A stretch of DNA of 64,000 bases. Source: Selaginella moellendorffii (lineage: Eukaryota; Plantae; Lycopodiophyta). A program made the position numbers and the translations under genes. Each line of letters starts with the position of its first letter. Within the stretch, counting starts at the first letter, position 1. Of the stretch, positions 4,785-35,825 are shown piece by piece. The notes beneath the pieces were generated by a model. That model made no database searches. It saw nothing but the letters and a program-made list of their open reading frames with translations, and was not told the DNA's origin. The stretch spans positions 146,151-210,150 of the forward strand of contig NW_003314302.1 of NCBI RefSeq assembly GCF_000143415.4. The letters run 5' to 3'.

Positions 4785-5578
4785 TGAGAGAGCTAGCTCG
4801 AGAACACAGCCCTTCTCCATAAAGCCACGAGCTCAATCAAGCATACCGGCCATTAATCAGCGTGGAATACGTTATAGAGTTTGGCGCACTCGCCGACTTT
4901 CTTCTCTCTCCATCGATAGCAGTGGTATACAACACCACATCCAGTCTTCTTCAAGTTCCAGGTCCCCAACTGGTTTAGTCTGCAGAGAATGGTATAGAGT
5001 GTAGATAAGCAGCTTCTCCTCGTCTCACCGAAAACATGCACAGCATCAAGGTCGTGAAATTCAGCACAGCCCCCTGCGATCATCTGGTTGAGAAGATCGT
5101 ACGCATCGTCCAACCTTGTCAGCTTGCAGAAGCCGTTCATGAGGGTGGTGTACGTCCGGAGAGCTTCCAGTCTCAGCCATCCGGTTCATCGCCTCGTCCA
5201 TCTGTCCCAGGGAGTTGTAAATCACCGTGTTGCTGCCTCTCTTGATCATCTGGCCGAAGTGATCAATCGCCTTCTTCGTCTGAAGAAGAACAAGAGCTTG
5301 ATGTCCTGCTCCAAGGCGGGGTCATGCACACAACCTCATCAACAATCCCCAGCTTCTGCATTTTGCCACACAGCCTCTCCAGAGCAATCTGCACACCCCG
5401 CATGCCACAACCGCACGAAGCGTCCATCTCCTCCTCGAACAGCACCTGGGGATCACAAGACTTGTGCGTCCAGTGCCTCCTCACATGCGCAGCCACCTCC
5501 GCCTCTCCCCCTTGAATCAGCTGCTCCTTGAAGAAGCCAAACAGCTCCTCGTCCTCGTCCTCGTCCTCCACCTTGAGC
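4785..5578 (-). pseudogene. Chimeric deleted inverted copy of the APH-like gene (47832-49220) joined to pieces of the PPR gene (51157-53592)
   Basis: KVEDEDEDEELFGFFKEQLIQGG..RRHWTHKSCDPQV matches the APH C-terminal part; MDEAMN, MAETGSSPDV, MNGFCKL.RLDDAYDLLNQM match the PPR, with many deletions. Confidence 0.9.
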
Positions 5579-7471: not shown

Positions 7472-7565
7472 AAGAGACTTGTTCTTCAGTTTTTGTTTTT
7501 TGTTCTCCCTGTCTTGATTTATGTCTCTCGACTTTCTCTGATCTTTTGAGTTGTGATCTTTCCAG

Positions 7566-8600
7566 GTGGGTCAATCTGGAGCTTAAACTTGTGGCGGACG
7601 TGGGAATTATAGGTGTTCCAAACGCTGGAAAGAGCACGCTACTAAGTGCTATCCGTGCTGCTCGTCCCTCCATTGCTGCGTATCCATTTACGACACTACT
7701 ACCCAACCTTAGTGTGGTGTCGCTGGACTTCGATGCAACGATGGTTATAGCGGACTTGCCCGGGCTTCTCGAAGGTGCTCACGCTGGATGCGGCCTCGGT
7801 CACGAATTTTTACGCCACACTCGAGTCCTGGTAAGCTTTTTGTTTTAAACTTTCCTGCGTGCTAAAAGTTTCTTTGGAAAACCAGATTCATGTTATAGAC
7901 GGTACGACTGCCAGAATTCGAGTACGATGCAGTGACTGGAGCTGGAACTGTTTGATCCTCGCCTTTGCCCCAACAAGATGGATGTCCCAGAGGCTGCCGA
8001 ACGCTGGGAAAGTTTCCGGAAAGCTATGGAGTCTCGTGGAGTGGAGGTTCGTTCCGTGAGCGCCGCAAGTTGTACGTCATGCGTATAAGCTTCTACAGAC
8101 AGTCCCAGTTGGTAAGTATGAAACACTACTTTTAACTCGACTGTGGAACTCTTTCTCTACTATTCTTGCAGAAGAACCCGTGTCGATCTCGAACGACGTA
8201 GCTTCGATGGTGAAAAAGGAGCGAAGTAGTCCCATTGGAGAATTTAAGGTGGACGTCGACCCAGAATCAGACTTGTGGCACATTTACGGTTCTGGTGTGG
8301 AGCGCTTCACGCAAATGACTAACTGGGAGTAAGCTTACATCTTTTATCTTCCCATTCTTTCGAGTATTACAGCTCTTACACGACTCGCAAGTATTTCGAG
8401 TCCTTGCAACGATTCGAGCGGGTCTTAGAATGCAGCGGGATAAACGCCGAGCTGAAAAGTAGAGGAATTCACGAAGGAGACAAAGTTGCGATCAGAGACG
8501 TACGTTAAATTCACACTCTTCGTTCTGTGCTATGTTTGTTTTTCTTTTTTCTTCGAACTTACAGATAGTTTTCACTTGGCACGATTCCAATGATGTTGCA
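7566..8600 (+). pseudogene. Chloroplast Obg GTPase, 3' half only
   Basis: [44 protein letters not shown]; C-terminal DUF1967-like exons; no 5' exons, frameshifts. Confidence 0.9.
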
Positions 8601-8737
8601 AATGTGGGGACTTGGAGACGCGGCCAGAGAGGCCACACACTGATGCCTCGTTTGTAGAAAAGGTGATATTTTTATCTACAATTTTTCGCTTGCGTTCCAG
8701 AGAGACATAAAAGGCCTGGTGGTTTACGTTTTTGCAG

Positions 8738-10876
8738 CCAAAGGTGTTAACATTTGGAAGATACAAAGGCCAGCCTCTCGGTTTTCTTCCAGCGAACTAT
8801 CTGCAATGGATGACACAGGAGCTAGACAACCACTGGAATGGCTTGGCCAGGCAAGTTCTATCAGAAAGAAAAGAAGGAGAAAGCTCGAGCACTCAAGAAG
8901 AACGTTTCTGCTCCGCAGAGTTCTCGCAAAGTTGGATCCATGGTTCTCACTTCGGGAAGTACAAAGGCCAAGCGCTGGGTTCTCTCCCGGACGTGTACCT
9001 GGAATGGATGGCGAACAACAGCACACACACTGGGGGAGACACGGGAGAGAGTTTCTGGATAGCAAGCACGGTGGTGATCGAGAAGTTCGCATCGCCCAAG
9101 AACAGGATGGATCGATCGCGTTGAAGAAGCAGATCCTGGCTTGTCAAGAGAGGAGAGGCCTCGAGGAAGCTAAGCGGATCCACGCGCGGGTGAAAGCCAG
9201 CGCCTATCGCGACGATCGATACATCGCCAATCTTCTCATGGACATGTTTGGAGCTTGCGGGAGCGCGGACACGGCGCTGGAGATCTTTGAGAAGATCCAG
9301 GCGCCCAACATCTTCTCCTGGAACATCATCCTCAAGGTTGTCACGCAGAAGAATGGATGCGATCCAGAGGCGTGGAAGATTTTCGAGAAGATCCCGGAGA
9401 AGGAGAAGAATGCCGTGTCGTGGAACATCATCCTCGCCGCGCTCGCGGCCGAGAAGGGGAATTTGCGCAAAGTGGAGGAGTTTTTCTACGAGAGGATGCC
9501 CGTCAAGGATGTGTTCTCCTGGACTACACTACTCAATGCCTACATAACAAATGGGCGGTTTGACAAGGCCAGGGAGATCTTTGTGAGCCTCGATGACGAG
9601 AATGTAAACGCCGCTACGTGGAACACGATGATAGAAGGATATGCCCAGGCAGAGGATATGCTGCAAGCCAGAAAAATGTTCGATAGCATGCCCGAAAACA
9701 GCGTTGTGTCGTGGAATTTGATGATTACATAATGTGAAAGAAGCAAGAAACTTTTTTGAAAAAGTGAAGGAGAAAAACCAGGTGACTTCGAATGCGATGC
9801 TTGCTGTATATGCCCACAACGGGCATCTGCAGGAAGCAAAAACCTTGTTTGCTGAGATGCCAAAGAAAGATGGCGCTTCGTGGACGTGTTTGCTGCAAGC
9901 ACACTGCCATGCAGGGACAACCCATGATTCGGAGGAGATCCTGCAGAAGATGCCGTTTGAAAAGACTATTGTGCACTGGACGATGCTGCTGGATGCCCAT
10001 GCAAAGGCCGGGAATCTCGATCGAGCGAGGGAAGTTTACGACCAAACGCCGGATCCGGGTGCGATCACGAGGAATGCCATGTTCCACACAGAGGATACAT
10101 GCACGAGGCAAATGCGCTGTTCGAGCAAGTTGGAGACAAGGTTGACGCCGCGACAAAGAACATCATGATCCTGGCGCATGGATCGTCTGGGAACTTGGAT
10201 CACTACGACTGCATGGTTGGAGCTTTCGGAGCCGCAAAGAAGATGGAAGACGCAAGAGAGCTCATTGTAGCATGCCTTTCGAAGCTGATGCTCGAGTGTG
10301 GATGACTCTACTTGCTTGCTGCCGGAGGCACTTGGACACGGAGAATGGCAAGCTTTGCGCAGAGAGATTGTTTGTTTTGGATCCAGAGAACGTTTCACCG
10401 TACAAGATCCTCGTGGAGATCTACAGCCAAACCGGGAGAGAGAACGACATTGCTGGATTGAAGAAGATGGTGAGAGACAAAGGTCTCCACAAGCTCGAGG
10501 CCGAGAGCCTGATCCAGATCGATGGCATCACGCACAAGTTTCGAGTGGGAACACTGCGCATCCGAGCATCAAGAAAGTTCGCAAGGAAGTTGCCAGGTTG
10601 ACGAAGCTGATGGAGAGAGATCATGGGTATAAACACGAGAACTTGGGATGGAGCAAGTGTGGAGGCGGTGTTCACAGTGAGAAGCTTGCAATCGCGTACG
10701 CACTGTGTGAGAAGAGCCGTGAGATCTCGCTCGTGAATAACTTGAGGATGTGCGGTGACTACCATACTTCTGCAAAGATGATCTCCAGCGTGGTGAAGAG
10801 GAAGATCACGGTACGTGACATGCAAAGGCTGCATGGTTTTGAGAATGATGTTTGCTCTTGCGCGGATACCTGGTAA
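8738..10876 (+). pseudogene. PLS-E-DYW PPR with N-terminal tandem FGxYKG..LP..YL.W (DUF3820/ExoX-C-like) repeats, copy 1
   Basis: PLS motifs (NIFSWN, NAVSWN, DVFSWT), E domain (WMTLLACCRRH..LDPENVSPY), DYW region HSEKLA..NLRMCGDYH..CSCADTW*; stop at 9730-9732 and several frameshifts. Confidence 0.9.
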
Positions 10877-10879
10877 GTT

Positions 10880-11224
10880 TTAGTCTATTGTGGTTCCAGA
10901 GGTGGGAAGATCGTGATGGATCCATTCGTTAAATCCACCCTGGAGGTGGAAAACGTTTGTGAATCCTGCTTTTTGGAGTTCATATGCCGCTTTCAATGAT
11001 CTGTAAGGAGAGTTTCTTTCTGAGAGGTTTTGACGCAAGATCGGACGAGAGTACCTCGACTGACATCCAAAGAAGCGCTCGGGATCCTTGAACTTCTTTG
11101 CTTTAGGCCCTACGTGAGGAGAGTTCCTCCAATGCTGCACAGGACGATTACTTTCGTGTTCTTGTCGCTGTTGACAGCGTCGAGAGCTTTCTCGGCGAAT
11201 TCTGGGTTGCGCTCTGCCATGCAA
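10880..11224 (-). pseudogene. Rhodanese-like protein, C-terminal exons, copy 1
   Basis: ERNPEFAEKAL..VIVLCSIGG, KKFKDPERFFG, RSLKAAYELQKAGFTNVFHLQGGFNEW; frameshifted. Confidence 0.75.
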
Positions 11225-11678
11225 ACTCTTTCAGTATTCTCTAGTTAGAAGCGAGGGGGAAATTTAACCTGTGCCGGAGAAGTTCGTAAGCAAGGCAAAT
11301 CCCAGTTGCCTGCTCAACCAGACCAAAGCATAAGCAAAAAATCTTTGAGAAAAAAAGAGAAGCAGGAAACCTGGCATTTGCTTTGAGATCGTTTCCTTGA
11401 ATTTGTTGGAACAAGGGAGCAGACTTTGTGGGGAGAAGCTCTTGTTTATCACTTGCATGTCTAGTTTGGCAGAAGAGGTTGAGTATGCAATATCACACTT
11501 AAAAAGATTAAAGAAAGTCTAAAAATGAAACAAACAACATTTTGATTCCTTGCTCTCTTGAGGAGTCTTGAGCACAGCCGTTGCAGAAGGGTCATATCTT
11601 CCTAGATTTAGACTGGCAATCTTTAATCTTTCTTGCAGGTTAGGGTTCTTCAGTACGCTTCAATGATTAATTAGCTGA

Positions 11679-17100: not shown

Positions 17101-18940
17101 ATGGAAGCTCCTGCCCCTTGCAATCCCTTGCAAGCTGCGGCCTCCAGGTATGCTGCAGGGCAGAGATTACAGGAGAATGCGGGCCAGAAAGATGGTCTAG
17201 CGCCATTGTTTTGGCATCCGAGAACAAATCCAGGAAGAAGAATGTGGAGGACGATTTCGCTGCATACACGACGGCTGCGTTGGCTCTGCTAGAGGAGTAT
17301 GCTGCCGGATGCAGCGTGGCTGTGCTAGAGAAGAAGAAAGATTTGTCATCCAATCTGGGAGCAAAGGAAACTTTGCAGCGTGAGAAATTTTCTTCCAGAG
17401 TTTCTCAAAGGGAAAGTTCGACCATTGGACGAGGACGAAGAGAAAGAAGAGAAGGAAGACGAGAGAGTGGAAGTTTGGGAGGCGACTTGAGCCCAATGAC
17501 CGCCGAGGAGGAGCGTCAGCTACTGGCTGAAGCTGAGGAGGAGCTCTCGGAGCTCAGGAAGATGCATGGAGAGCGTTCCATTTTTGAGAATCGCTCGAAG
17601 CTTGGGATCGAAGGATGACGACCGCGTGGAGATAAGATGGAAGTCTGGAACGAAGAGGAGGACTCTTCCACAGATGTTTCTACGAGTGACAAGGAAGATC
17701 GAGCAGGAACAAGAAAGGCGTGCCTGCTGTGATGAGGTGCTTCGACCGAGCAAAGATTTACGTCAAAGCTGGGGATGGTGGCAATGGTGAAGGAGCCGAA
17801 ATGTTGGTTCTCAATCCCCTCTCTTCAAGCGTGATGGTTTGTTCTTCAGTTTTTGTTTTTTGTTCTTCCTGTCTTGATTTGTTTGAGCTGTGATCTTTCC
17901 AGGTGGGTCGATCTGGAGCTTAAACTTGTGGCAGACGTGGGAATTATAGGTGTTCCAAACGCTGGAAAGAGCACGCTACTAAGTGCTATCAGTGCTGCTC
18001 GTCCCGCCATTGCTGCGTATCCATTTACGACACTACTACCCAACCTTGGAGTGGTGTCGCTGGACTTCGATGCAACGATGGTTATAGCCGACTTGCCCGG
18101 GCTTCTCGAAGGTGCTCACGCTGGATACGGCCTCGGTCACGAATTTTTACGCCACTGAGCGCTGTCGAGTCCTGGTAAGCTTTTTGTTTTAAACTTACCT
18201 GCGTGCTAAAAGTTTCTTTGGAGAACCAGATTCATGTTATAGACGGTACGACTGCCAGAATTCGACTACGATGCAGTGACTGGAGCTGGAACTGTTTGAT
18301 CCTCGCCTTTGCTCCAACAAGATGGATGTCCCAGAGGCTGCCGAACGCTGGGAAAGTTTCCGGAAAGCTATGGAGTCTCGTGGAGTGGAGGTTCGTTCCA
18401 TGAGCGCCGCAAGTTGTACGTCATGCGTATAAGCTTCTACAGACAGTCCCAGTTGGTAAGTATGAAACACTACTTTTAACTCGACTGTGGAACTCTTTCT
18501 CTACTATTCTTGCAGAAGAACCCGTGTCGATCTCGAACGACGTAGCTTCGATGGTGAAAAAGGAGCGAAGTAGTCCCATTGGAGAATTTAAGGTGGACGT
18601 CGACCCAGAATCAGACTTGTGGCACATTTACGGTTCTGGTGTGGAGCGCTTCACGCAAATGACTAACTGGGAGTAAGCTTACATCTTTTATCTTCCCATT
18701 CAGTTCTTACACGACTCGCAAGTATTTCGAGTCCCTGCAACGATTCGAGCGGGTCTTAGAGTGCAGCGGGATAAACGCCGAGCTGAAAAGTAGAGGAATT
18801 CACGAAGGAGACAAAGTTGCGATCGGAGACGTGCGTTAAATTCACACTCTTCGTTCTGTGCTATGAGCCCACTGTTTGTTATTCTTTTTTCTTCGAACTT
18901 ACAGATAGTTTTCACTTGGCACGATTCCAATGATATTGCA
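17101..18940 (+). pseudogene. Chloroplast Obg GTPase (ObgC-like) with the Obg fold deleted
   Basis: [23 protein letters not shown] joined directly to [16 protein letters not shown]; 2-nt loss gives EFLRH* at 18158. Confidence 0.88.
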
Positions 18941-19091
18941 AATGTGGGGACTTGGAGACGCGGCCAGAGAGGCTAAAAAAGTTGGCCACACTGATGCCTC
19001 GTTTGTAGAAAAGGTGATCTTTTTTCTACAATTTTTCGCTTGCGTTCCAGAGAGACAAAAGGCCTGGTGGTTTACGTTTTTGCAGCGATAA

Positions 19092-20685
19092 TGGCTACCA
19101 AAAGTGTTAACATTTGGAAGATACAAAGGCCAGCCTCTCGGTTCTCTTCCAGCGAACTATCTGCAATGGATGGCACAGGAGCTAGACAACCACTGGAATG
19201 GCTTGGCCAGGCAAGTTCTATCAGAAAGAAAAGAAGGAGAAAGCTCGAGCACTCAAGAAGGTGGCAGCAACGTTTTTGCTCCGCAGAGTTCTCGCAAAGT
19301 TGGATCCATGGTTCTCACTTCGGGAAGTACAAAGGCCAAGCGCTGGGTTCTCTCCCGGACGTGTACCTGGAATGGATGGCGAACAACAGCACACACACTG
19401 GGGGAGACACGGGAGAGAGTTTCTGGATAGCAAGCACGGTGGTGATCGAGAAGTTCGCATCGCCCAAGAACAGGATGGATCGATCGCGTTGAAGAAGCAG
19501 AGCCTGGCTTGTCAAGAGAGGAGAGGCCTCGAGGAAGCCAAGCGGATCCATGCGCGGGTGAAAGCCAGCGCCTATCGCAACGATCGATACATTGCCAATC
19601 TTCTCATGGACATGTTTGGAGCTTGCGGGAGCGCGGACACGGCGCTGGAGATCTTTGAGAAGATCCAGGCGCCCAACATCTTCTCCTGGAACATCATCCT
19701 CAAGGTTGTCACGCAGAAGAATGGATGCGATCCAGAGGTGTGGAAGATTTTCGAGAAGATCCCGGAGAAGGAGAAGAATGCCGTGTCGTGGAACATCGTG
19801 CCGCGCTCGCGGCCGAGAAGGGGAATCTGCGCAAAGTGGAGGAGTTTTTCTACGAGAGGATGCCCGTCAAGGATGTGTTCTCCTGGACTACGCTGCTCAA
19901 TGCCTACATAACAAATGAGCGGTTTGACAAGGCCAGGGAGATCTTTGCGAGCCTCGATGACGAGAATGTAAACGCCGCTACGTGGAACACGATGATAGAA
20001 GGATATGCCCAGGCAGGGGATATGCTGCGAGCCAGAAAAATGTTCGATAGCATGCCCGAAAACAGCGTTGTGTCGTGGAATTTGATGATTACATAATGTG
20101 GAAGATGGATGACTCTACTTGCTTGCTGCCGGAGGCACTTGGACGGGGAGAATGGCAAGCTTTGCGCAGAGAGATTGTTTGTTTTGGATCCAGAGAACGT
20201 TTCACCGTACAAGATCCTCGTGGAGATCTACAGCCAAACCGGGAGAGCGAACGACATTGCCGGATTGAAGAAGATGGTGAGAGACAAAGGTCTCCACAAG
20301 CTCGAGGCCGAGAGCCTGATCCAGATCGATGGCATCACGCACAAGTTTCGAGTGGGAGACACTGCGCATCCGAGCATCAAGAAAGTTCGGAAGGAAGTTG
20401 CCAGGTTGACGAAGCTGCTGGAGAGAGAGATCATGGGTATAAACACGAGAACTTGGGATGGAGCAAGTGTGGCAGCGGTGTTCACAGTGAGAAGCTTGCA
20501 ATCGCGTACACGCTGTGTGAGAAGACCATGAGATCTCGCTCGTGAATAACTTGAGGATGTGCGGTGACTGCCATCCTTCTGCGAAGATGATCTCCAGCGT
20601 GGTGAAGAGGAAGATCACAGTACGTGACATGCAGAGGCTGCATGGTTTTGAGAATGATGTTTGCTCTTGCGCGGATACCTGGTAA
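19092..20685 (+). pseudogene. DUF3820-like x2 + PLS-E-DYW PPR, copy 2
   Basis: Same architecture as copy 1; retains HSEKLA and CGDCH zinc-binding motifs; internal deletion and frameshifts. Confidence 0.9.
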
Positions 20686-20688
20686 GTT

Positions 20689-21033
20689 TTAGTCTATTGT
20701 GGTTCCAGAGGTGGGAAGATCGTGATGGATCTATTCGTTAAATCGACCCTGGAGGTGGAAAACGTTTGTGAATCCTGCTTTTTGGAGTTCATATGCCGCT
20801 TTCAATGATCTGTAAGGAGAGTTTCTTTCTGAGAGGTTTTGACGCGAGATCGGACGAGAGTACCTCGACTGGCATCCAAAGAAGCGCTCGGGATCCTTGA
20901 ACTTCTTTGCTTTAGGCCCTACGTGAGGAGAGTTCCTCCAATGCTAAACAGGACGATTACTTTCTTGTTCTTGTCGCTGTTGACAGCGTCGAGAGCTTTC
21001 TCGACGAATTCTGGGTTGCGCTCTGCCATGCAA
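20689..21033 (-). pseudogene. Rhodanese-like fragment, copy 2
   Basis: Duplicate of 10880-11224. Confidence 0.75.
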
Positions 21034-21347
21034 ACTCTTTCAGTATTCTCTAGTTAGAAGCGAAATTTAACCTGTGCCAGAGAAGTTCGTAAGCAAGGCA
21101 AATCCCAGTCGCCTGCTCAACCAGACCAAAGCATAAGCAAAAAATCTTTGAGAAAAAAAGAGAAGTTCCTTGAATTTGTCGGAACAAGGGAGCAGACTTT
21201 GTGGAGAGAAGCTCTTGTTTATCACTTGCATGTCTAGTTTGGCAGAAGAGGTTGAGTATGCAATAGTAGTGGTGTGAGGCTTTGAGCTTTGCAAAGAGCA
21301 AGGAATTCCAGGAATAGATATGAGGATTACACAATATTCCCTTTATT

Positions 21348-32500: not shown

Positions 32501-34893
32501 CTTTTATGACATTGACTTACTATATTGCAACATAAGCAACTTATCCCCCGTAAGGGTATATCCGACTTCCCTATACTAAAAGTCTTGGGTAGCTACCTTC
32601 TACCCGTTTAACCAGTTATTTTGCACCTCTTGCTTAGTTGCCTCATAGTTGTCAAGTCCTACAACTCATTGCTTGGTGCTTTCACACCTCCATCACTATC
32701 TGGGTCACCACACTCCAACTGCATGCTCTGCAGCTTAGGCTATGCCATTCCCATTTCCATTGGGATTCCTTTGGCAAGGGGTTCTCATGAACCCACCAAC
32801 ATAGCCTCAAGGTATCACACCTTGACACATTTGGTGTCTCCACACCATCGGCTCCACGAGCCTACCTCTATGACACTTTCCCTTCGTATCTAAGTCTTTG
32901 CCAAGACCAACACCGCCCTTTCTCATGCCAACCATCTGTTAGCATTGCACCATAGAGGTCACACACAACTTTGTGTCAAAGTTGTTTTCTGCTGGGAACA
33001 CCTTTCCCATAACTTTAGCATGGCATATTTTGCCATCGATGAGATACCCTCTGTTCTCATCCTTGGATCCTATGATCCCCCCCCATCCTTTGTGGGGTAC
33101 AACACACCTCAGTCCAAATGCTTCCATCGGTCCTTTTAGGACCATCCGTTGACTCTGCTTGAGTCATCCAGCAGTTTTGGACTTGGTTAATCCACAGACC
33201 CGTAAGGTCCTACTTGTGAGGCACTAGCTCACTGGAATACACTTCTTGCATTCCTGTCCTACTCAAAAGGACTATTTTCACAAGTGTTACTCCGACACTT
33301 GATTTTGTTCTCTGGGGGCAACCTTTGCCCCTTAGGACTACTTGTCCATGTGATGAGAACACCAACTCATCCACTTAATACACCCCCAACTCCTTGGGTT
33401 GTTCCAGCATTTATTAGAGGTAGCCCCGGCTACCTTTTCGAGGACTTGAGTCCTCTTCCGTATTTGACCTCCCACGGTCATTACTTCTGGTCTCGCTTTC
33501 ATGAGCACCAACCTCAACTATGTGAGGAAAATCTTGTGACTCCTTTATTGCTTTGGAGTCTTTATCTTTCCTGTGATCCCAACTGTAGTTGTTTACCACA
33601 ACTACATTAGCCAGTTTGTTAAGTCAAACGCTCATCTGGATCACATCCTCAACTCTTTGAGGAAAACCATATACTGTTCCCAAGATCCCAAAGTCGTTCC
33701 ATTATTGGCCCTTTTCTATCCACCACCTCGTCTACAAGTTCACACATGAACTGTAATGGAGAGCCATGTCTTCCCGACTTGCTACTCCTCAAGGATAGGC
33801 CCACTCCTCGGACCTTCCGATGCCAACACTAGTGGTGATATACTTGAGCACCAATAAAAGTCGGACTAAGGAACAGCTCCGATACCAAGTTGTAAGCGAC
33901 TAAATTTTCCATTTTACTTTAGTCACTTAACCACACGTCTGACCACTTGGAGGAGTCTCATTGACAACTTCCATAAGTCCAACTCAGGACTTGGGGCTTG
34001 CTAACCCCGAGAATGGCATCCATGCCACTCAACCTTAGCACTTGGTCCAAGTGCTCCACGTGTCCGATCCCATGATCGACACCCCAAGGTATCACCAATG
34101 TACCGGCCTGTTACGCTAAGGCCATGCTTATTTACCTTGGTCACACTGGTGGTCCACCACCACTTGCATCACCGTCTTGGCCCTCCAAGACTAGGCAAAC
34201 CATCCGTGAGTGGTCATCTCAGATCCACTCCTTAGCATCCTTAGGATGCCCACCGACAAGGGGAATAGCCTTCCCCAATATCCCTCTGTCAGTCTCCACT
34301 AAGTCCCTTTCTGCCCCTGGCCGTGTTTGCCAACACTGCCACTGGATCGAGACCCACAGGCCCGACCACTAAGTCCCACGGTCCTCTGGGACTTCCTCAC
34401 CACACGACTGTGTCCTTGGTCACTACCCCAGAGGACTGCTCCTCTTCCTTTCCACAATCTGGGCCTTTGGGACAACATTTCAGAACACCGTGGCCTTATG
34501 CGAGCCACCTGGGTACTCTCCTCGCCTTCTGCCCTTGGGTGCTCTAGCCATGGGCTTAGAGCGGGTTCCGTTGAGCCACACCAGGTATCCAAGTAGGTAG
34601 TGCCACCCACACTTGGACTGGGAGCATCGGCCAGTCGATCTCCCGGGGGAACTAGAGCCGGCTCTTGAACACTTCACCAAGCTACCCCGCTTGTCGGTCT
34701 GTGTTCACTCTAGTCTTGGACTTCCCAGTGGGCAGCTCATCACCCAACACTGGGTCTGGCCTTCCTGGGCCAAACTGGCCTTTCCTGGCCAAACTGGCTC
34801 CACTGCAGTCCTCCCCCTACTATACTTTTGGAGCTCACCAAACCCCCCAGGGTCTGGGAGACGAACGCTTTGGGCTTTCACCCTCTCAGGCTC

Positions 34894-35590
34894 CGGACTC
34901 GGACTCGGACTCGGACTCGGACTCGGACTCGGACTCGGACTCGGACTCGGACTCGGGCTCGGACTCGGGCTCGGGCTCGGTCTCGGCCTCGGCCTTGGTC
35001 TCGGTCTCGGTCCCGATCTCGATCTCGGTCTCGGTCTCGGTCCCGGTCTCGGTCCCGGTCTCGGTCTCGACTTCGGACTCCATCTCGGACTCCATCTCGG
35101 ACTCCATCTCGGACTCCACCTCGGGTCCATCTCGGACTCCATCTCGGACTCCATCTCGGGTCCATCTTGGGTCCATCTCGGACTCCATCTCGGACTCCAT
35201 CTCGGACTCCACCTCGGGTCCATCTCGGACTCCATCTCGGGTCCCATCTCGGACTCCACCTCAGGTCCATCTCGGGTCCATCTCGGACTCCATCTCGGAC
35301 TCCATCTCGGGTCCATCTCGGACTCCATCTCGGACTCCATTTCGGTCCATCTTGGGTCCACCTCGGACTCCATCTCGGACTCCATCTCGGGTCCATCTCG
35401 GACTCCACTTCGGACTCCAACTCGGGTCCATCTCGGGTCCACCTCAGACTCCACTTCGGACTCCAACTCGGGTCCATCTCGGACTCCACTTCGGACTCCA
35501 ACTCGGGTCCATCTCGGACTCCACTTCGGACTCCAACTCGAGTCCATCTCGGACTCCACTTCGGACTCCAACTCGAGTCCATCTCGGACA
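34894..35590. repeat. Same compound minisatellite in the 5' LTR
   Basis: Apparently identical array at offset +5993. Confidence 0.97.
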
Positions 35591-35825
35591 CTCCCACGTG
35601 TCATGTGTTGGTCCTTTTGGGTCCCTTTTTGGAGCCTCGCCTTTTGCTCGCTTCGTGCTCGTTCCTTGAGCACTTCGTTGGGAGTTCCACTCCCGCTCTT
35701 GACTTTTCAAGTCGGAGCTTTTGGTCCAAACGTGTTACGCTCGTTTGGCTCTCGCTTCGGCCACTACCATGTGGCGCCCTTCCGGCTCCACTTTGGGGCC
35801 TAGGGATTTTGTGTCTCACAGAGAC

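What the first reader, a model, noticed from the sequence alone, without database searches (positions are those of the whole stretch)
8738..10876. Tandem DUF3820/ExoX-C-like domains fused to a PLS-E-DYW RNA-editing factor
Seen in both copies (also 19092-20685): repeat 1 VLTFGRYKGQPLGSLPANYLQWMAQELDNHWNGLARQVLSERK and repeat 2 VLTFGKYKGQALGSLPDVYLEWMANNSxTHWGRHGREFLDSKH. Repeat 2 aligns without gaps to repeat 1 once single bases are restored at ctcac(t)ttcggg and in the CA run near 9022, and its second half is already in the PPR frame. So the ancestral ORF ran repeat-repeat-PPR-E-DYW. Combining the two copies upstream gives GGLRFCSDNGYQKVLTFG, reminiscent of a mitochondrial presequence end (speculative). 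Established: FGKYKG..L..LP..YL.W typifies small DUF3820/exonuclease X C-terminal-like domains of bacteria and phage, and DYW domains are C-to-U deaminases. I know of no editing factor with this appendage. Inference: a new editing-factor architecture with an extra nucleic-acid or protein-binding module; an intact parent gene may exist elsewhere.
Basis: partly seen in the sequence, partly recalled or inferred. Interest (0 to 1): 0.85.

Follow-up and report, generated by a model that had tools for sequence, protein, structure and literature searches.

The report
Broken copies of fused RNA editor
This spikemoss locus holds two dead copies of a transcribed gene whose RNA-editing enzyme starts with two small helical add-on modules, related to an unstudied plant protein and to the tails of bacterial nucleases; I found no paper on this architecture and its function is untested.

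Summary
The window is Selaginella moellendorffii scaffold GL377606.1. The two repeats are real PF12843 (DUF3820) domains (E 2e-13). Both window copies are pseudogenes inside a duplicated Obg / PF12843x2-PPR-E-DYW / rhodanese block. Spliced RNA contigs from three studies, about 96-97% identical, show or arithmetically imply the repair of every copy-1 lesion: one ORF of about 815 aa. An unidentified other plant has the fusion as one intact 783-aa ORF.

1. The proposed presequence is 5'UTR in the wrong frame; the protein probably starts MAT..VLTFG, with no separate transit peptide.
2. The closest kin are not phage proteins but a plant family, Arabidopsis At1g51080.
3. The PPR array is made of short S-type motifs, not PLS triplets.

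Both fused DYW domains replace the autoinhibitory lysine (OTP86 K915) with Asn. The best guess is an accessory nucleic-acid-binding module on an organellar C-to-U editor; this is untested. This scan had already noted the architecture at several other loci of this genome.

The parts
7479..11492 (+). Copy 1 of the duplicated block (Obg 3' half, fusion pseudogene, rhodanese 3' part)
   Evidence: blastn and pairwise alignment with copy 2, 2.2% substitutions plus 16 indels
7479..8662 (+). Obg/CgtA GTPase pseudogene, 3' exons; the ancestral frame ends ...KSWPH-stop (TGA 8641-8643)
   Evidence: MMR_HSR1 hit; NCBI model with DUF1967 on copy 2; spliced RNA joints; frame
8663..8700 (+). 38-nt GT-AG intron 19 nt after the Obg stop; alternative acceptor at 8713/8714; UTR intron
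   Evidence: joints 8660>8699 (X5, X12) and 8657>8709 (X18); book-keeping
8744..8872 (+). PF12843 repeat 1, copy 1 (start ATG deleted in this copy)
8943..9069 (+). PF12843 repeat 2, copy 1, two one-base losses; its second half is in the PPR frame
   Evidence: T after 9020 in three RNA runs and one DNA run
9121..10270 (+). PPR array of short 31-34 aa motifs; broken by a 17-nt loss with stop 9730-9732, a 10-nt loss near 10080, a 261-nt in-frame loss at 10198 and a 1-nt loss at 10267
10272..10549 (+). E motif and degenerate PG-box region
   Evidence: PF20431 E 8.5e-08; compared with 9kfx
10550..10876 (+). DYW deaminase: HSE kept, CxxC broken in copy 1 (intact in copy 2), K915-equivalent is Asn, gating region about 8 aa short, ends DTW
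10883..11430 (-). Convergent rhodanese-like gene, 3' exons, overlapping the fusion gene's 3' end
   Evidence: weak Rhodanese hit; CT..AC joints in RNA
17839..21265 (+). Copy 2 of the block; Obg 5' remnants continue upstream to about 17400
19091..19093 (+). Likely start codon, context GCGATAATGGCT (A at -3, GC at +4/+5); out of frame in this copy
19104..19232 (+). PF12843 repeat 1, copy 2
   Evidence: (E 1.2e-05)
19311..19437 (+). PF12843 repeat 2, copy 2, same two one-base losses as copy 1
19489..20685 (+). PPR-E-DYW pseudogene, copy 2, with a 557-nt deletion and further frameshifts

Best explanation
Shown: the window holds two tandem, non-functional copies of a block whose intact, transcribed parent lies elsewhere in S. 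moellendorffii. The block was pseudogenised first and duplicated afterwards, since the copies share lesions. Inferred from indel book-keeping: the parent encodes about 815 aa, with two PF12843 helical mini-domains right after the start Met, then an S-type PPR array, E and a DYW cytidine deaminase. Inferred mechanism: the PPR array reads an organellar RNA and the DYW domain deaminates the target C, as in other editing factors. The PF12843 pair is a non-catalytic, sequence-non-specific nucleic-acid-binding appendage that sits 5' of the PPR footprint and raises affinity or helps open structured RNA. It was probably recruited by exon shuffling or retroposition from the plant At1g51080 family in early vascular plants.
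For: Fusion and parent: RNA contigs of three studies at about 96-97% identity; 9121-to-stop is 2046 nt (682 codons) in two runs; each lesion is repaired by an insertion of the needed size (+24 in the 5' part, +17, +10, +261, +1, +1). Shown substitutions are enriched for synonymous changes (10 of 21, p 0.02, on a listed subset). An independent intact ORF, P0030, has the same order of parts. Donor: the W-x-x-L-A-x-x-V-L helix, which lies outside my search pattern, is in 6 of 6 plant domains and 1 of 62 others; P0030's intact repeat is 56% identical to At1g51080; the pattern finds no viral or prokaryotic hit. Role: elsewhere the domain is a tail of DnaQ/ExoX exonucleases and helicases and is dispensable for ExoX catalysis (PMC3753628). 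PPR N-termini engage the 5' side of the RNA first (PMC13324415). Zinc ligands and the catalytic Glu are kept.
Against: No binding or editing data, and no solved structure of the domain. The Selaginella parent has no evident transit peptide, so organellar location is unproven. Its DYW has lost the PG box, has a shortened gating region and lacks the K915 latch, so it may be inactive or regulated differently; removing the beta-finger reduced OTP86 editing. I saw the parent only as differences and lengths, not as a sequence. Tree support for a plant clade of the domain is weak (65/88, 47 columns).
Confidence: 0.5

Rival explanations
1. The fusion is real, but the repeats are a protein-docking module (for an editosome partner, an SSB/OSB-type protein or a second DYW protein) rather than a nucleic-acid binder.
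For: Small helical domain with a conserved aromatic face; occurs in tandem arrays and on varied enzymes; in RNA-editing factors domain fusions mirror protein interactions (PMC13386178).
Against: The conserved FGK(H/Y)KG loop is basic and aromatic, and the named partners are all nucleic-acid enzymes. No structural match to a known adaptor (best Z 4.7).
Confidence: 0.2
2. The repeats are passengers or were reused as an import signal: captured by retroposition, tolerated, and in Selaginella serving as the N-terminal targeting peptide.
For: The first 30 residues of the inferred parent are basic and acid-free and begin MA (inference); repeat 1 of P0030 has decayed; lycophyte PPR genes expand by retroposition (PMC13386178).
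Against: The full signature (FGxxKG, LP, YLxW, W-helix) is kept in both Selaginella repeats and in a distant plant that has its own N-terminal extension. An import signal would not need it.
Confidence: 0.15
3. The transit-peptide-less members work outside organelles or on single-stranded DNA, as a PPR-guided cytidine deaminase in cytosol or nucleus.
For: Start codon directly before repeat 1; the domain belongs to DNA exonuclease and helicase tails; the autoinhibitory Lys is lost. Unchecked scan notes report more members without a transit peptide and a parallel fusion with an ssDNA-binding PDF module.
Against: P0030 has a 50-residue Ser/Pro-rich extension and At1g51080 has a transit-peptide-like start. 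Characterised plant DYW proteins are organellar (own knowledge). No target data.
Confidence: 0.1
4. The parent is a catalytically dead or chimeric product of read-through from Obg, with no selected function.
For: Degenerate PG box and gating region; transcript contigs run on from Obg.
Against: ORF kept intact while its duplicates decayed; excess of synonymous differences; same architecture in another plant.
Confidence: 0.05

Closest known systems
PLS-class PPR-E-DYW (DYW:PG) C-to-U editing factors, e.g. OTP86, PPR56, synthetic PPR-DYW 9kfx
   Same: PPR array, E motif, HSE and CxxC active site, second zinc site, terminal D-x-W
   Different: Two PF12843 domains at the N-terminus; K915-equivalent is Asn; in Selaginella also a lost PG box, short gating region, S-type array and no evident transit peptide
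Arabidopsis At1g51080 family (stand-alone PF12843 plant proteins, 270-300 aa)
   Same: Same domain subtype with LG(S/T)LP and the W-x-x-L-A-x-x-V-L helix; 47-56% identity
   Different: Single domain behind a transit-peptide-like start, no PPR or DYW; function unstudied (one incidental mention)
C-terminal tails of ExoX and DnaQ-like DEDDh exonucleases, phage helicases (PF12843 / PF20600)
   Same: Same fold and FGKxKG..YLxW motif
   Different: There it is C-terminal on DNA enzymes; here N-terminal and tandem on a deaminase
Known PPR fusions (RRM-PPR, RRM-DYW, MORF-PPR, PPR-SMR)
   Same: An accessory domain joined to a PPR protein (PMC13386178)
   Different: That survey's main text does not mention PF12843/QSregVF

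Membership tests
PF12843 (DUF3820/QSregVF_b) | Pfam gathering score 22 | tested here: met
   50.4 bits for the two repeats together, 25.5 and 26.1 singly in copy 2
PF12843 (DUF3820/QSregVF_b) | Fold | tested here: met
   TM 0.92 to a PF12843 cluster model; both sides are predictions
PF20600 ExoX-like_C | Pfam gathering score 26.5 | tested here: not met
   25.9 bits; related but below cut-off
At1g51080 plant family | Domain subtype motif | tested here: met
At1g51080 plant family | Conserved downstream region (ERFGWD..KxGW) and stand-alone layout | tested here: not met
   Present in the family; similarity to the fusions ends with the domain. Shares a domain, is not a member
PPR-E-DYW editing factor | PPR array followed by E motif and DYW domain | tested here: met
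   contiguous in transcripts by length and in P0030
PPR-E-DYW editing factor | P-L-S triplet organisation | tested here: not met
   Window spacing 31-34 aa (S-type runs); P0030 has 101-aa triplets and does meet it
PPR-E-DYW editing factor | HxE(x)nCxxC and second zinc ligands | tested here: met
   HSE in both copies, CGDCH in copy 2, later H and CxC kept; copy 1 has C>Y; parent residues not read directly
DYW:PG subtype | PG box | tested here: not met
   Window KLEAESLIQI and P0030 KTLGCSHIEV against KEPGCSWIEV
DYW:KP (U-to-C) subtype | KP box and HAE | tested here: not met
   HSE, no KP (definitions PMC9478123)
PPR-E-DYW editing factor | Organellar targeting | tested here: inconclusive
   No separate transit peptide inferred for the Selaginella parent; P0030 has a plausible one, judged by composition only
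PPR-E-DYW editing factor | Site-specific C-to-U editing | not testable with these tools
   Needs an assay
Functional gene at this locus | Intact ORF and matching transcript | tested here: not met
   Many frameshifts and a stop; no RNA contig 99% alike or more (contigs drop rare forms)

The most novel reading that the evidence does not exclude
Seed-free vascular plants have a family of PPR-DYW deaminases with the autoinhibitory lysine removed, in which an N-terminal exonuclease-tail module replaces the transit peptide and directs them to non-organellar RNA or to single-stranded DNA.
Probability: 0.1. Interest if true: 0.9.

Novelty: new variant of a known kind. Interest (0 to 1): 0.55.

Why it matters
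Selaginella has one of the largest PPR repertoires (3,861 genes; PMC13386178), and MORF helpers are confined to seed plants (same paper). A built-in accessory domain could be one way its editors work without them. The fusion also ties an unstudied conserved plant protein (At1g51080) and a domain of unknown function to organellar nucleic-acid metabolism, and gives a simple test: E. coli editing with and without the module. Natural DYW domains lacking the K915 latch test the gating model and could be useful in editor engineering. The window copies themselves are only pseudogenes, and the annotation of this scaffold leaves the repeats out.

Tried and rejected
Word-indexed homolog searches found no Selaginella parent protein and no further relative of P0030's N-terminus; length and word limits make these blanks uninformative. 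Exact look-ups of nine window ORFs failed. P0047 (SELMODRAFT_11159, 30%) is not the parent and its locus was not on record. PDB sequence, profile and fold searches gave nothing significant. Single-sequence folding of P0030 was unusable (pLDDT 45). The one-clade test did not finish. The species of P0030 was not identified. Rejected: the mitochondrial presequence (wrong frame, downstream of two acceptors 13 nt apart); an Obg-PPR protein fusion in the main isoform (Obg stops before the intron); recent phage transfer (plant family closer, no viral or prokaryotic pattern hits); assembly error alone (lesions differ between the copies and RNA differs by 3-4%); DYW:KP. No PPR-code target prediction was attempted, because 87 codons of the array are missing from the window and no organelle genome was available. 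I did not type or search a joined, repaired protein; pieces were searched separately by reference.

Full report
Source. The window is Selaginella moellendorffii, assembly GCA_000143415.2, scaffold GL377606.1. It contains two copies of one block, 7479-11492 and 17839-21265, which differ by 2.2% substitutions and 16 indels. Each block holds the 3' part of an Obg GTPase gene, the finding, and the 3' part of a convergent rhodanese-like gene.

Observation. The ORF 8732-9121 hits PF12843 (DUF3820, QSregVF_b) at E 2e-13 in two stretches, and the repeats pass the cut-off singly in copy 2. PF20600 falls just short. PPR, E and DYW hits follow. A model of repeat 1 built on 68 homologues (pLDDT 88, a loop and two helices) matches a PF12843 cluster at TM 0.92. 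The repeats also match the C-terminal tails of DnaQ-like and ExoX exonucleases. Both copies are broken by several frameshifts and a stop. Some lesions are shared and others private, so decay began before the duplication.

The parent. Contigs of three RNA runs from three studies lie on copy 1; their spliced joints show that they are RNA. The long pieces differ at about 3-4% of letters and none is 99% alike. They carry insertions exactly where copy 1 is broken: T after 9020, 10 nt near 10080, A after 10267 and G after 10550. By length they also carry 17 nt near the stop at 9730 (seven codons, the missing part of a PPR helix) and 261 nt at 10198. From 9121 to the DYW stop the span is 2046 nt, 682 codons, in two runs independently. 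Ten of 21 listed substitutions are synonymous in the proposed frames (p 0.02 against 25%; only a subset was listed). I saw the parent only as differences and lengths, so 'intact ORF' is a strong inference and not a read sequence. Contigs do not prove single molecules.

The N-terminus. In the transcripts the Obg frame stays open to ...KSWPH-stop at 8641-8643. A 38-nt intron follows 19 nt later. Two runs splice to 8701 and one to 8714, 13 nt further, with no letters between (104 + 42 = the 146 upstream letters of that contig). Acceptors out of frame with each other point to a UTR intron. All three runs have 24 extra bases in the 5' part, all downstream of 8714. Nine are needed between the repeats and one at 9020, which most simply leaves 14 before repeat 1. 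That puts the ATG kept in copy 2 (19091; A at -3, GC after) in frame with repeat 1. The parent would then start MAT..VLTFG and be about 815 aa. With the 8701 acceptor the frame is also open back into the last Obg exon, so a 42-residue longer form is possible, but it does not look like a transit peptide.

Beyond Selaginella. The exhaustive search returned P0030, 783 aa. It has a 50-residue Ser/Pro-rich start, a decayed repeat, an intact repeat, canonical PLS triplets, E, E+ and DYW in one ORF. It or a one-residue variant is on five contigs from five runs of what looks like one study. The species was not identified. It has no Obg upstream. It shares with the window the two-repeat layout, the LSER ending of the helix and NNLR in place of KNLR. 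That lysine is OTP86 K915, which is restricted to DYW domains and holds the catalytic Glu in the inhibited state (PMC7611903). A single origin is plausible but untested: the arrays differ, and I could not count how common the Asn is in unfused lycophyte DYW domains.

Where the module comes from. A DNA pattern for the shared core found nothing in viral contigs or prokaryotic genomes. It found 12 metagenome contigs, 11 of them stand-alone plant genes of 270-300 aa: Arabidopsis At1g51080 and a poplar orthologue, with transit-peptide-like starts. The pattern was derived from the fused repeats, so finding similar cores is partly circular. The second helix was not in the pattern, however, and its W-x-x-L-A-x-x-V-L motif occurs in all 6 plant domains against 1 of 62 others. 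Best non-self pairwise scores and tree distances also point to this family, with weak branch support. The likeliest donor is therefore a plant gene and not a recent phage transfer.

How it probably works. From established knowledge, PPR motifs bind RNA one base each and DYW deaminates C. The structural work says the N-terminal motifs engage the 5' side first (PMC13324415), so the repeats would sit upstream of the footprint. Elsewhere the domain rides on exonucleases and helicases and is not needed for ExoX catalysis (PMC3753628). My best reading, about 0.5, is a non-specific nucleic-acid-binding helper on an organellar editor. The rivals are protein docking (0.2), passenger or import signal (0.15), a non-organellar or ssDNA deaminase (0.1) and a dead chimera (0.05). 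The Selaginella DYW keeps HSE and, in copy 2, CxxC, but lacks the PG box and about 8 gating residues, so activity is not assured. It is not a DYW:KP type.

Novelty. No paper in the library joins DUF3820, PF12843 or QSregVF to PPR proteins, and a 2026 kingdom-wide survey of editing-factor fusions does not mention it in its main text (supplements not held). The library lacks most subscription papers. At1g51080 has one incidental mention. Earlier notes of this scan list the architecture on several other pieces of this genome. I did not check those loci and do not count them as evidence; one of them may be the parent.

Verdict. The feature is real. It is a new variant of a known kind, seen here only as pseudogene copies. 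Interest 0.55. A joined, repaired protein was not typed or searched; its pieces were searched apart by reference.

Noticed in passing
window:8498-8745: RNA contigs run from spliced Obg exons through a UTR intron into the fusion ORF, whose ATG would be about 60 nt after the Obg stop: a dicistronic mRNA or overlapping transcripts. One contig also continues into the antisense rhodanese transcript, so contig merging is possible.
   Followed up: partly
window:8560-8570: A second AG four bases into the last Obg exon would, if used as acceptor, shift Obg into the fusion frame and give an Obg-PF12843-PPR-DYW protein. No RNA support was seen.
   Followed up: partly
L012:9805-10659 (At1g51080), L007, L005: Conserved angiosperm protein with a transit-peptide-like start and a PF12843 domain, labelled 'Golgin family A protein' or 'virulence factor' in databases; essentially unstudied.
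   Followed up: partly
window:8964-9170: A DNA run has a window-like allele that still carries the T at 9020 but has other lesions (10 nt missing at 10409), so pseudogene lesions seem to vary between samples.
   Followed up: no
window:11955-13616 (-): 553-aa ORF with a signal-peptide-like start and no Pfam hit; NCBI joins it with the rhodanese exons into an 852-aa model, probably an annotation chimera.
   Followed up: no
window:27898-29827 and 33891-35820: Two 1.93-kb direct repeats, 99.9% identical, rich in low-complexity repeats; LTR-like and very recent.
   Followed up: no
window:47832-49220: 462-aa ORF that looks like an APH/kinase-fold protein, with a partial inverted copy near 5267-5575.
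   Followed up: no
window:51157-53592: Intact 811-aa P-class PPR gene with a transit-peptide-like start.
   Followed up: no
window:15988-16830: Subtilase (Peptidase_S8) fragment between the two copies.
   Followed up: no
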